From Mytilus edulis (lineage: Eukaryota), in assembly GCF_963676685.1 (NCBI RefSeq), contig NC_092347.1, positions 46,500,001 to 46,564,000 of the forward strand: a stretch of DNA of 64,000 nucleotides, given 5' to 3'. This document shows, in pieces, positions 817 to 3,800 of this stretch (positions are counted from its first letter, which is position 1; each line of letters opens with the position of its first letter). The notes under the pieces are model-generated. The model made no database searches, had not been told where the DNA came from, and saw only the letters and a list, made by a program, of their open reading frames with translations. A program made the position numbers and the translations under genes.

Positions 817-3800
817 GTTTGTAAACGGATACAATATTGTCAATAATTCAAAGACCTTTTTTTTTCCTGAGGGGTCATCTTCTCGTCAACTATGGATTTA
901 AATAAAACAAAACAAAAAAATCTCTAGCCAGACTTGTTAAAGAACAACCTGTGTATATGAAAATTTTAAGGCCAGCCTAGATCAGGGCTTTCATTAAAGA
1001 GGGTCCAAAATAAATGTCATTTTTTACTAATTTAAAAAAAAGATATGTCAGAACAGTTTTGCACACTCTGTATGTATCAAACTGTGATTCATGTCACCAC
1101 TTTAGAAAACAATATGATTAAAGTCACAAAGTAGTGTTGATTATACCAAGCTAATTGTAGCAGGTAGTGTATATAATCATTTTATATATTTCCTGATTCC
1201 AATTACTTGTTCCTATGTTAGTACATTAATTTTCAAGGGTTTATCACATTATAAATATGTACAGAACAGTTTTCCATAAAAAGGTATATTTTGGTTTATA
1301 GAAATTTTAAACAATTGTAATATTGTGTCACATACGTGTGGATAATTTTAGTATAACATAAAAAAAATATATATTAATATTTTATCTATCTATCATTCTT
1401 CAATTTTCCACTTTCAGTCACAACTTTGACTATTAAGTGCAGTTTCATGCATGGCTTATTTTTAATTTAAAAGAAATAAATTTTCAGTAAAAATATGTAA
1501 CACTGCATTGGTGCATAGAAAAAATAAAATAAAAATATAACAGTGATGTAATTAATTCTATTATGATATACAATGTAGAACTATTTATTCCTTTTAATAT
1601 TGGATTATTTTCTTTTATTTTAGAGGTCGGTTAATCCTTATGATTGTGTCGAAGAAGATGTTAAGGTCACAAGTAGTGCTGAAAGATTTAAAGATGGTCA
1701 TATAGGAATACTCACAACAGAGTTAGAAGCCCCTGCATCAAAACTCACAACAGTCAGAGAATCATATAAAAAACCAGAACCTTGTGGAGTTCGATTGATG
1801 GGTAATATATAATTTACATAATTTATTCAATATGTAAATGGAATTAAACAGCCATCATTTTTGTATGTCAAATAAATATATGCATATTCCATTCTCAATA
1901 TTATAGTTAAAGTATAAAAGTGCTATTTTATAATATAAATAACAGACAATAGACCATATATTCTATTAACACAAACACATTTACAATAAATGGCAATGAC
2001 AGAATGAATTAACATTGATGTGAAAATCCATGGATGGTACCAGCGGGATTCGAACCCTCAATCTTGGGATCTAAAGGCAGCGCTCTAACCAATTGAGCCA
2101 AAGAAGATCTCCCCTAACTCAACTAGTTAGACTACCTTTATATCCCCAGGTCTACAACACTCTTCCCCTTTTTCTTTTTTCGGGCTGTGTACCATCCATC
2201 CGAGCAACTCACAGGTCCACTACCTGTACAACCCCGAGACATCTACTCGGAAATCCTCTGGCCAGTTCCACCTAGATATGTCATGGTCATCCTATGACCA
2301 CTGTTCAACCACCATGACCCCATATCAAACTACCAGGCACCTATATACACTTGTTTGTACAAATAGTAATTGCTCGCAGCGCCAATGATGTGAAAATCCA
2401 TGGATGGTACCAGCGGGATTCGAACCCTCAATCTCGGGATCTAAAGGCAGCGCTCTAACCAATTGAGCCAAAGAAGATCTCCCCTAACTCAACTAGTTAG
2501 ACTACCTTTATATCCCCAGGTCTACAACAATATGCAGGGTTCTCACTAGGAATTTTTCATTGTGAGTCCTGGGTCTTAGTAAAATACAATCAATTATATA
2601 TACATGTTTATGTGAATAAAAAATCTAAGGTATTTGTAATAAAAATCTATAGCAATAGATTATTTTTTGAATTTAAATAATCTGTTACCAAAGAGGAAGA
2701 TAGTTTTAGTGCCCTGTAATATTTGATATTAAGTATAAGCTTTATTTGAATTTTATCGCAAAATGTGGTCATACTTTTTTCTGTAATTACAACATCGATG
2801 TACATCAACTTGAATTTTGCAAGAAATTATTTTGAATTTGTTTCTTTATTTAAAATTTGTTTATAAAATATATGAAATAATATTTTTGTAGGTAAAAAAG
2901 AACAAATGATGAGAGAAATGTTTTTTGAAAAAGTTGGGTAAGTTTTATCCATCATGTCTATTGGTAGAAGTTATAATTTTTGAAAATATTTGTTTTTCAT
3001 TATTATTATTTGACCAAGAAATAGTGTTCGGATATACATACTTCTTTAACTGACAGTCTAACATATAGAAGCTACCAATTGCAAAAATGAAGATATATTG
3101 GTACTTTTAAATATAACTCTGTACAGTTGAAATCTTTAGTTGACTCCTCATTAGAGTTATATTGCCCTATGGTCAATAACTTTTACCAATATTTTGCATT
3201 TTGCCTTTAAATAGATTGTGATAATAAAAATTTAAATAATAACAGATGATAGAAATTTTAAATATTTTCAAAATGAATAGTTACTAGACTGTCATTTTTT
3301 AAGAGCCTTTATCAGTCATGCTGCTTAGCACATTGAAAAATCTATCTATTCAGAATTTCTATGTAGTATCAATTTTCTGCTGTAAGATGTGAAATCCATC
3401 CATACAACCTTAATTTCCAACATTTTTCAGTAAGACAGAGTGTAAATAAAGAGTTCACTATTTCATGAGAAAGGCAACTAATTAACAGTATGAATTGCAA
3501 AATGATACTCTGCAAGTCTGACAGTCTTAATACATGTATTTTTACAGAGTTAAAATCAGAATGCATTGCTACCAATACATTTCATTTACAGGAGAGAAGT
3601 TTTCAATGAAGAATTAGAAGCATCACAACCAGAACCCACAGACTTTAGATCAGTTACAAATAAAGATTTCAATATTGAAGGTTTTAAATCTGTACGACCT
3701 CAGCCTACAAAGGTCAGTAGAATAAATTTGAATCATTAAATATGTGACAAGAATTGTGTTTGTTTCATTTACAAATTGGAGGTCATTAAAATTAAATCGG

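What the first reader, a model, noticed from the sequence alone, without database searches (positions are those of the whole stretch)
2016..2529. Young, structurally complete TRIM whose LTRs are built around a tRNA-derived Pol III promoter
Seen: two 144-bp TG...CA direct repeats differing at one base (2065 T vs 2435 C). On the minus strand each contains an A box (TGGCTCAATTGG), a D-arm-like hairpin, a B box (GGTTCGAATCC) and a terminal CCA. A 14-nt PBS lies 1 nt inside the 5' LTR, a purine tract abuts the 3' LTR, the 226-bp core is non-coding, and the flanks are ACAT/ATAT. Knowledge: this is a SINE-like promoter in an LTR-retrotransposon chassis, the tRNA analogue of Cassandra (5S in LTR). It matches my recollection of the Helenus group of TRIMs, with 4-bp TSDs in animals. 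Inference: it is recently inserted, is mobilised in trans by a Gypsy-type partner, and may be an uncatalogued family.
Basis: partly seen in the sequence, partly recalled or inferred. Interest (0 to 1): 0.85.

Follow-up and report, generated by a model that had tools for sequence, protein, structure and literature searches.

The report
Known mussel Helenus-2 miniature retrotransposon copy

Summary
Two 144-bp TG...CA direct repeats (2016-2159 and 2386-2529) differ only at 2065/2435. They flank a 226-bp non-coding core on the minus strand, with a 14-nt PBS, a 22-nt purine tract, and A and B boxes in each LTR.

LTR, core and total length (144/226/514, 4-bp TSD) equal Helenus-2_MyGa of Kojima 2024 (PMC10886601), at about 98% identity, so the genome is a Mytilus or a close relative.

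The family is dispersed and small: about 80 LTRs and 13 cores of this type. Nine of 15 independent full copies have perfect 4-bp TSDs.

New here:
- The PBS pairs perfectly with the genome's own tRNA-Ser(CGA/TGA).
- A candidate autonomous Ty3/Gypsy partner has the same LTR ends, primer tRNA, similar PPT and 4-bp TSDs.
- RNA reads have 5' ends at LTR position 50, 10 nt upstream of box A but also about 30 nt downstream of a TATAAA.

Pol III use therefore stays unproven. The "terminal CCA" is not in tRNA register. The insertion lies antisense in an intron and occurs in samples under two organism labels.

The parts
2012..2015 (.). Target-site duplication copy on the element's 3' side (ACAT on +, ATGT in element orientation)
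   Evidence: It matches the other copy at 3 of 4 positions.
2016..2159 (-). 3' LTR, 144 bp, TGTTGT...CACATCA. It carries CpA at LTR 95-96, where the 5' LTR and the published consensus have CpG.
   Evidence: Compared with Helenus-2_MyGa-LTR.
2023..2026 (-). T4 run (LTR 134-137) in the 3' LTR, the expected Pol III stop and end of R
   Evidence: Sequence. TTTT lies in the last 25 nt of 41 of 42 LTR copies. The function is inferred.
2046..2056 (-). Box B GGTTCGAATCC in the 3' LTR
2089..2100 (-). Box A TGGCTCAATTGG in the 3' LTR
2160..2181 (-). Polypurine tract GAAAAAAGAAAAAGGGGAAGAG abutting the 3' LTR
   Evidence: The same tract is in the published Helenus-2_MyGa-I.
2160..2385 (-). Internal portion, 226 bp, non-coding
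   Evidence: Longest ATG-ORF is 36 aa. It differs at 6 positions from the published core (by eye). The same six positions appear as variants in family reads.
2371..2384 (-). Primer-binding site TGGCGCTGCGAGCA, one nucleotide (2385) after the 5' LTR
   Evidence: It is perfectly complementary to the 3' end plus CCA of this genome's tRNA-Ser(CGA/TGA) genes.
2386..2529 (-). 5' LTR, 144 bp
2416..2426 (-). Box B in the 5' LTR
2459..2470 (-). Box A in the 5' LTR
2480..2480 (-). Pile-up of RNA 5' ends (LTR position 50), 10 nt upstream of box A
   Evidence: 46 of 67 molecules end here. These are family-wide reads from a run labelled organism C, not this copy alone.
2507..2512 (-). TATAAA (LTR 18-23), about 30 nt upstream of the RNA 5' ends
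   Evidence: Sequence. Present in 34 of 42 LTR copies, with TATA-like letters at the same place in the Modiolus and Limnoperna Helenus-2 LTRs.
2530..2533 (.). Target-site duplication copy on the element's 5' side (ATAT)
1801..2890 (+). Host intron (GT..AG) of an expressed + strand gene. The element lies inside it, antisense.
   Evidence: splice joint 1800->2891 in 36 reads with 17 start places.

Best explanation
Window 2016-2529 (minus strand) is one full-length copy of Helenus-2_MyGa. This is a catalogued tRNA-promoter TRIM ('TRIMp3') of Mytilus mussels.

Shown here: the element has two 144-bp LTRs, a tRNA-Ser primer-binding site, a polypurine tract and no coding capacity. Its family is dispersed and makes 4-bp target duplications.

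Inferred mechanism:
1. RNA starts at about LTR position 50, just upstream of the tRNA-like A and B boxes of the 5' LTR.
2. It reads through the weak T4 at LTR 134-137 and ends at the same T4 in the 3' LTR. That gives R of about 50-137, U5 of about 138-144 and U3 of 1-49.
3. It is reverse-transcribed from host tRNA-Ser(CGA/TGA).
4. It is integrated by the proteins of an autonomous Ty3/Gypsy element that has the same LTR ends (TGTTGT...TCACATCA), the same primer tRNA, a similar PPT and 4-bp TSDs.

The tRNA-like part is a promoter relic, not a working tRNA. This copy is relatively young and sits harmlessly, antisense, in an intron.
For: Identity with the published family:
- Published Helenus-2_MyGa has LTR 144, internal 226, total 514 and TSD 4.
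- By eye, its sequences differ from the window copy at 2 positions in the 5' LTR, 3 in the 3' LTR and 6 in the core. That is 11 of 514, about 98% identity.
- The same LTR and core positions appear as minority letters against family reads.

The family is mobile:
- At least 20 full copies lie on many contigs.
- Nine of 15 independent copies have perfect 4-bp TSDs: TAAC, TTAT, GTGA, ATAC, ATCA, GAAA, TCAT, ATAC, ATAT.
- LTR-LTR identity per copy runs from 84.5 to 100%.

Primer: 287 matches to the tRNA-Ser 3' end form a tandem array on C6, and the sampled locus holds four ARAGORN-called tRNA-Ser genes with CGA or TGA anticodons. Their 3' end plus CCA is the exact complement of the 14-nt PBS.

Candidate partner, G000:C6:4919786-4926264:
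- 289-bp LTRs that are 100% identical, and a 1712-aa ORF with RVT_1, RNase H, integrase and PHD domains.
- Ends TGTTGT...TCACATCA, a 1-nt spacer, PBS TGGCGCTGCGAGCAGGGTT, and PPT ...GGGGAGGAG.
- TSD ACGA. Other copies have TSDs ACAT, ATAC and GTAT.

Promoter:
- A-B box spacing is 44 nt, as in tRNA.
- About 55 nt around position 50 and box A are identical between the Mytilus and Modiolus Helenus-2 LTRs, although their cores are unalike apart from the PBS and PPT (by eye).
- Sense-strand RNA 5' ends pile up at LTR position 50.
Against: - Pol III use is not shown. A TATAAA about 30 nt upstream of the same 5' end fits a Pol II start equally well.
- The RNA reads come from a run labelled as another organism (C) and mostly from a diverged subfamily.
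- RNA coverage stops at 2165 in the PPT and hardly enters U3 of the 3' LTR. The standard genomic-RNA model does not predict this.
- This copy's TSD is imperfect (ATAT/ATGT).
- Similarity to the Gypsy candidate is limited to termini, PBS and PPT.
- Most other copies of that Gypsy carry a PBS variant with a 2-nt insertion.
- The window copy was compared with the published consensus by eye, not by program, because the consensus could not be loaded without typing it.
Confidence: 0.9

Rival explanations
1. Same element and family, but transcribed by RNA polymerase II from the TATA box in U3. On this reading the tRNA-like module is an inherited relic, for example of an old SINE insertion, with no present promoter role.
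For: TATAAA at LTR 18-23 lies about 30 nt upstream of the observed RNA 5' ends at position 50. TATA-like letters sit at the same place in the Modiolus and Limnoperna Helenus-2 LTRs. RNA coverage does not drop at the T4 of the 5' LTR. The reads come from an ordinary transcriptome library.
Against: There is no AATAAA in the LTR to end a Pol II transcript. Box A, box B and their tRNA spacing are kept across three mytilid genera while U3 and the cores diverge. The 5' end lies exactly where a type-2 Pol III gene would start. In insects and yeast, upstream TATA-like elements also serve Pol III tRNA genes (general knowledge).
Confidence: 0.3
2. The present copy arose by recombination between two older Helenus-2 copies, or its LTRs were homogenised by gene conversion. 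Near-identical LTRs would then not date the insertion, and the flanks would not be a true TSD.
For: The TSD matches at only 3 of 4 positions, although the LTRs differ at 1 of 144. In AT-rich DNA a 3-of-4 match has roughly a 10% chance by my estimate. The insertion is present in runs under two organism labels. The core differs from the published consensus at 6 of 226 positions.
Against: Both LTRs share the two private letters G15 and G49, as expected from a single reverse-transcription event. The flanks belong to one continuous host repeat whose other copies run straight across the site, so no rearrangement of the flanks is seen. One point change in a 4-bp TSD is enough to explain the mismatch.
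Confidence: 0.1
3. It is a local tandem duplication of a tRNA-derived SINE, not an LTR element.
For: Two direct repeats each contain a tRNA-like head.
Against: At least 20 dispersed copies share the same two-LTR structure, TG...CA ends, PBS and PPT, and have 4-bp TSDs of different sequence. There is no A-rich or LINE-like tail.
Confidence: 0.01
4. The LTRs carry working tRNA genes, so the element spreads tRNA copies.
For: The D-arm is intact, the T-arm has 4 of 5 pairs, and A and B boxes are present.
Against: ARAGORN finds no tRNA. Rfam scores 21 bits, below the gathering score of 29, and only over model positions 8-63. There is no acceptor stem and the anticodon arm is broken. Kojima 2024 reaches the same view for most Helenus families.
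Confidence: 0.02

Closest known systems
Helenus-2_MyGa (Mytilus galloprovincialis; Kojima 2024, Biology 13:119, PMC10886601, Data S1 and Table S1)
   Same: LTR 144 bp, internal 226 bp, total 514 bp and 4-bp TSD. The termini, PBS, PPT and A and B boxes are the same, at about 98% identity.
   Different: There are 11 single-base differences, two of them shared by both LTRs (G15, G49).
Helenus-2_MoPh (Modiolus philippinarum) and Helenus-2_LimFor (Limnoperna fortunei)
   Same: They share the tRNA-Ser PBS (TTGGCGCTGCGAGCA), the same tRNA-like block in the LTR and 4-bp TSDs. About 55 nt around box A are identical to the Modiolus LTR.
   Different: Their cores have different sequence and length (268 and 251 bp). 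Their LTRs begin TGTAGT and end CACAACA.
Cassandra (plants) and Ajax (nemerteans)
   Same: All are TRIMs with a small-RNA-derived Pol III promoter inside each LTR (class TRIMp3).
   Different: They carry a 5S rRNA module rather than a tRNA module, make 5-bp TSDs, and occur in other host groups.
tRNA-derived SINEs (SINE2)
   Same: They have a tRNA-like head with A and B boxes, are short and non-coding, and are mobilised in trans.
   Different: SINEs have no LTRs, PBS or PPT. They are copied by LINE machinery, with a tail and variable TSDs. None of that is seen here.

Membership tests
Helenus (tRNA-type TRIMp3, Kojima 2024) | Short non-coding element with two direct LTRs (TRIM architecture) | tested here: met
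   LTRs of 144 bp at 143/144 identity, total length 514 bp, longest ATG-ORF 36 aa.
Helenus (tRNA-type TRIMp3, Kojima 2024) | tRNA-like sequence in the LTR with box A (TRGCY...YGG) and box B (GGTTC) | tested here: met
   TGGCTCAATTGG and GGTTCGAATCC lie 44 nt apart. The Rfam tRNA match is partial, at 21 bits.
Helenus (tRNA-type TRIMp3, Kojima 2024) | PBS complementary to a tRNA just inside the 5' LTR, and a PPT before the 3' LTR | tested here: met
   The 14-nt PBS is the exact complement of the genome's own tRNA-Ser(CGA/TGA) 3' end plus CCA. The purine tract is 22 nt.
Helenus (tRNA-type TRIMp3, Kojima 2024) | 4-bp TSD in animals | tested here: met
   At family level, 9 of 15 independent copies are perfect. 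This copy matches at 3 of 4.
Helenus-2_MyGa (the specific family) | Sequence identity to the published LTR and internal consensus, with the same lengths | tested here: met
   The lengths are identical. About 98% identity was read by eye. The variant positions agree. No program alignment was run, because the consensus could not be loaded without typing it.
TRIMp3 (functional definition) | Transcription by RNA polymerase III from the LTR's internal promoter | tested here: inconclusive
   RNA 5' ends lie at LTR 50, 10 nt upstream of box A. However, a TATAAA lies about 30 nt upstream of that point, the polymerase was not identified, and the reads are from a diverged subfamily.
Helenus (animal) | Trans-mobilisation by a Gypsy-superfamily element | tested here: inconclusive
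   The candidate has identical termini, the same tRNA-Ser PBS, a similar PPT and 4-bp TSDs. Mobilisation itself cannot be tested with these tools.
Cassandra / Ajax | 5S rRNA-derived sequence in the LTR | tested here: not met
   The Rfam scan of 1500-3100 gives only sub-threshold tRNA matches in the LTRs and no 5S match.
SINE2 | Single tRNA-derived head plus body and tail, with no LTR, PBS or PPT | tested here: not met
   The two-LTR structure with PBS and PPT is repeated in all full copies.

The most novel reading that the evidence does not exclude
The most novel reading the evidence allows is incremental. First, the sharp RNA 5' ends at LTR position 50 would be the first in-vivo sign that a Helenus tRNA-like module really sets the transcription start, which Kojima 2024 says is not yet validated. 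Second, the tRNA-Ser-primed Gypsy with a C-terminal PHD finger would be the first named autonomous partner for the tRNA-Ser group of bivalve Helenus, for which the paper's Figure S2C lists none. Third, the stop of RNA coverage at the PPT might point to an unusual transcript form.
Probability: 0.35. Interest if true: 0.4.

Novelty: already known. Interest (0 to 1): 0.2.

Why it matters
This copy is one more instance of a published family, so it changes little. It is a sound annotation: tRNA-like hits here are repeat-borne pseudo-tRNAs and should not be counted as tRNA genes.

Three small additions could help anyone who wants to test whether Helenus elements are truly Pol III-driven and which Gypsy element moves them:
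- the exact pairing of the PBS with the genome's own tRNA-Ser;
- a concrete candidate partner;
- an RNA 5' end next to box A.

Kojima 2024 leaves both questions open.

Tried and rejected
- ARAGORN on the whole window found no tRNA, so a working tRNA was rejected.
- I looked for the autonomous partner among family hits that cover only LTR plus PBS (C11:31010660 and C11:31646521). They turned out to be one segmentally duplicated 4.7-kb stretch with no long ORF, so they were rejected as partner.
- Other tRNA-Ser-primed LTR elements:
  - L042/L050 on C2 has degraded ORFs.
  - L045-L047/L049 on C8 has LTR TGTAGT...CACAACA and no ORF of 150 aa or more within 8.8 kb. It was not pursued, but it could serve the CACAACA subfamily.
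- BLAST of the Helenus core against the Gypsy interior found nothing beyond the LTR end, PBS and PPT.
- Within-genome LTR copies show no extra conservation of boxes A or B. This is uninformative, as expected for neutral decay.
- A search with the tRNA-like 76 nt alone, to find a parent SINE, returned only Helenus-2 LTRs.
- No empty-site read or contig was seen in three DNA runs. The organism C contigs simply do not reach the junctions, so this says nothing about polymorphism.
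Full report
**Observation**

The window holds two 144-bp direct repeats at 2016-2159 and 2386-2529. They start TG and end CA and are 143/144 identical. On the element strand it is a CpG in the 5' LTR, as in the published consensus, against CpA in the 3' LTR. That is the commonest kind of decay.

The element reads on the minus strand in this order:
- 5' LTR (2529 down to 2386);
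- one spacer T (2385);
- a 14-nt PBS TGGCGCTGCGAGCA (2384-2371);
- a 226-bp core whose longest ATG-ORF is 36 aa;
- a 22-nt all-purine tract (2181-2160);
- 3' LTR (2159-2016).

The flanks are ATAT and ATGT in element orientation, a 3-of-4 match.

Each LTR has box A TGGCTCAATTGG (LTR 60-71), a D-arm GCTC/GAGC and box B GGTTCGAATCC (LTR 104-114). The boxes are 44 nt apart, which is the tRNA spacing. Rfam's tRNA model matches only positions 8-63 at 21 bits, below the gathering score of 29. ARAGORN calls nothing.

With T8 at LTR 60 and T54 at LTR 106, the 'CCA' at LTR 123-125 is at tRNA positions 71-73, not 74-76. The would-be acceptor strands (TCTTCTT and TGGTACC) also cannot pair. The module is a tRNA-derived promoter relic, not a tRNA.

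**What it is**

A search of the window's own genome (1.37 Gb; the window is C4:46500001-46564000) finds at least 20 full-length copies on many chromosome-scale contigs, at 81-96% identity. I placed LTRs and cores in each locus and read the flanks.

- Nine of 15 independent full copies have perfect 4-bp TSDs of unrelated sequence: TAAC, TTAT, GTGA, ATAC, ATCA, GAAA, TCAT, ATAC, ATAT.
- Four copies, including the window copy, match at 3 of 4.

Kojima 2024 (PMC10886601) defines Helenus as TRIMs with a tRNA-like sequence in the LTR, with 4-bp TSDs in animals, and lists 51 families in pteriomorph bivalves.

- Table S1 gives Helenus-2_MyGa (Mytilus galloprovincialis, assembly MGAL_10) as LTR 144, internal 226, total 514, TSD 4. 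These are exactly the dimensions here.
- Data S1 prints its LTR and core.
- Compared by eye, the 5' LTR differs at 2 positions (15 and 49), the 3' LTR at those two plus the CpG site, and the core at 6 positions. That is 11 of 514, about 98% identity.
- The same positions (2111, 2145, 2481, 2515, and 2169, 2188, 2300, 2304, 2332, 2363) are where family reads from three DNA runs carry the consensus letter. This checks the count independently.

So 'may be uncatalogued' is refuted, and the genome is a Mytilus or a very close relative. Organism names in the read tools were coded.

**Family portrait**

The family is small.
- A 27-mer over box A (up to 2 mismatches) occurs 80 times in the genome.
- A 27-mer of this core type occurs 13 times.
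- LTR-LTR identity within copies runs from 84.5 to 100%. The window copy, at 99.3%, is among the three youngest of 15.
- One tandem array LTR-I-LTR-I-LTR, with TSD GAAA, lies at C5:95526784-95527705. Kojima notes such arrays for another Helenus family.

A second subfamily has LTRs 93-96% like this one but a core only about 77% alike, with LTR ends CACAACA or CACAATA. It is not among the four MyGa families in the paper's data file.

**How it most likely works**

Primer. The genome has a tandem array on C6 near 73.35 Mb with 287 matches to the tRNA-Ser 3' end. The sampled locus holds four ARAGORN-called tRNA-Ser genes, with anticodons CGA and TGA alternating. Their 3' end ...CCTGCTCGCAGCG plus CCA is the exact complement of the 14-nt PBS. 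The paper aligned this PBS to an Aplysia tRNA-Ser only with a gap. With the host's own tRNA the match is perfect.

Partner. I searched the genome for the PBS extended to 17 nt, as the tRNA predicts. This gave six places in four LTR families. One of them, at C6:4919786-4926264, is an uninterrupted Ty3/Gypsy element:
- 289-bp LTRs that are 100% identical;
- one 1712-aa ORF with RVT_1, RNase H, integrase zinc and core domains, and a C-terminal PHD finger;
- LTRs that begin TGTTGT and end TCACATCA, exactly like Helenus-2;
- a 1-nt spacer, PBS TGGCGCTGCGAGCAGGGTT, and PPT ending GGGGAGGAG (Helenus: GGGGAAGAG);
- TSD ACGA.

About ten paired-LTR copies of this family exist. Four more that I checked have the same termini, with TSDs ACAT, ATAC, GTAT and ATAG/ATAC. 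Most of them carry a PBS variant with a 2-nt insertion. Beyond termini, PBS and PPT there is no similarity, which the paper expects for a Pol III TRIM and a Pol II partner. This makes it a good candidate, not a proven partner. The paper's Figure S2C names no Gypsy for the tRNA-Ser group.

Transcription. Kojima states that Pol III use by Helenus lacks experimental validation. I laid raw stranded RNA reads of one run (X21, labelled organism C) on the region.
- The host gene's reads have the first mate on the minus strand, and a GT..AG joint 1800->2891. The gene is therefore on the + strand, and the element lies antisense in a 1090-bp intron.
- Reads of the opposite direction, which is the element's sense, cover 2165-2480 at depth 37-139. 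Forty-six of 67 molecules end at 2480, which is LTR position 50.
- Position 50 is 10 nt upstream of box A, where a type-2 Pol III gene should start. It is also about 30 nt downstream of a TATAAA at LTR 18-23, so a Pol II start fits as well.
- Across genera (by eye), about 55 nt around position 50 and box A are identical between the Mytilus and Modiolus LTRs. Box B and a T-run near the LTR end are also kept, while U3 and the cores diverge. This argues that the module is under selection.
- The first T4 on the sense strand is at LTR 134-137. On the Pol III model it must be read through in the 5' LTR and used in the 3' LTR.

I give Pol III about 60% and Pol II from the TATA box about 30%.

Caveats on the RNA evidence:
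- The reads are from another organism label and mostly from the diverged subfamily. Clipped continuations at 2269 and 2372 match subfamily-B cores.
- Coverage ends sharply at 2165, inside the PPT (74 of 108 molecules), and hardly enters U3 of either LTR, although DNA contigs of the same organism cover U3.

**Age and site**

- One CpG change in 144 bp says the two LTRs were copied recently in relative terms.
- The two letters shared by both LTRs, and the six core differences, are best explained by a source copy that was already slightly diverged.
- DNA contigs spanning both junctions exist in a run labelled organism B. A contig spanning the left junction exists in the best organism A run, which may be the assembly's own sample. 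The insertion is therefore not private to one individual.
- No empty-site allele was seen, and the organism C contigs do not reach the junctions.
- The target lies inside another high-copy repeat. Other copies of that repeat run straight across the site. They favour ACAT-like letters as the original target but do not settle it.

**Comparison and verdict**

This is a member of Helenus-2_MyGa. All structural criteria are met, and only the functional ones (Pol III use, Gypsy mobilisation) remain inconclusive. It works like Cassandra and Ajax but carries a tRNA module rather than a 5S module. It is not a SINE.

Novelty is 'already known', and interest is low. The small additions are the own-tRNA match, the candidate partner, the RNA 5' end and an unlisted subfamily.

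An earlier first-stage note of this scan (s1-834646) describes a similar tRNA-bearing miniature LTR element elsewhere in this genome. I did not test it.

Only short patterns were typed. The direct mobilisation test was referred.

Noticed in passing
G000:C6:4919786-4926264 (locus L048, minus strand): Uninterrupted Ty3/Gypsy element with 100% identical 289-bp LTRs and a 1712-aa ORF. The integrase is followed by a PHD finger (Pfam PF00628, E 7e-9) instead of a chromodomain. It is tRNA-Ser primed and has TSD ACGA.
   Followed up: partly
G000:C6:73350162-73386330 and on (loci L035-L040): A long tandem array gives 287 matches to the tRNA-Ser 3' end. The sampled locus holds four ARAGORN-called tRNA-Ser genes, with CGA and TGA anticodons alternating at spacings of 315 and 423 bp.
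   Followed up: partly
G000:C11:31010660-31011083 and C11:31646245-31646670 (L031, L033, L041): A Helenus-2 LTR, then T, then an 18-nt tRNA-Ser PBS, is joined head-to-head to an inverted, diverged (about 75% identical) LTR of the Gypsy family. The structure sits in a 4.7-kb segmental duplication. It is a possible relic of an aberrant reverse-transcription or recombination product between the two elements.
   Followed up: partly
L010, L012, L014, L016, L018-L025 (e.g. G000:C12:447671-448198): A second Helenus-2 subfamily has LTRs 93-96% like the window's, but a core only about 77% alike and LTR ends CACAACA or CACAATA. It is not among the four M. galloprovincialis families in Kojima's data file. 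Most sense RNA reads in run X21 seem to come from this type.
   Followed up: partly
window 2165 and 2480: Sense-strand family RNA has sharp limits at LTR position 50 and inside the PPT. It hardly covers U3 of either LTR. The stop at the PPT is unexplained.
   Followed up: partly
window 1935-2015 and 2577-2620: The element sits inside another dispersed repeat, with at least 40 scored copies at 81-86% identity. Other copies of that repeat run straight across the insertion site.
   Followed up: partly
window 2535-2573: A roughly 40-nt hairpin-like stretch (CAGGGTTCTCAC...GTGAGTCCTGGG) has extremely high depth in all three DNA runs. It replaces about 9-15 nt found in other copies of the host repeat. 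It may be a very abundant miniature element.
   Followed up: no
G000:C1:65564652-65565389 (L026): A Helenus-2 copy is interrupted by a solo LTR of the candidate Gypsy partner (C1:65564963-65565242, 92% identity, opposite orientation).
   Followed up: no
G000:C5:95526784-95527705 (L011/L013): A tandem array LTR-core-LTR-core-LTR of the second subfamily is flanked by a perfect TSD GAAA.
   Followed up: no
G000:C8:75557188, 75817845, 75925285 (L045-L047, L049): Another tRNA-Ser-primed LTR family has LTRs beginning TGTAGT and ending CACAACA plus spacer T. These are the ends of the Modiolus and Limnoperna Helenus-2 LTRs and of subfamily B. No long ORF was found in the 8.8 kb examined.
   Followed up: partly
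window 1600-1800, 2891-2938, about 3593-3720 (+): These are exons of an expressed + strand gene, shown by spliced reads. The peptide pieces read ...TTVRESYKKPEPCGVRLM / GKKEQMMREMFFEKV / REVFNEELEASQPEPTDFRSVTNKDF.... The gene was not identified.
   Followed up: no
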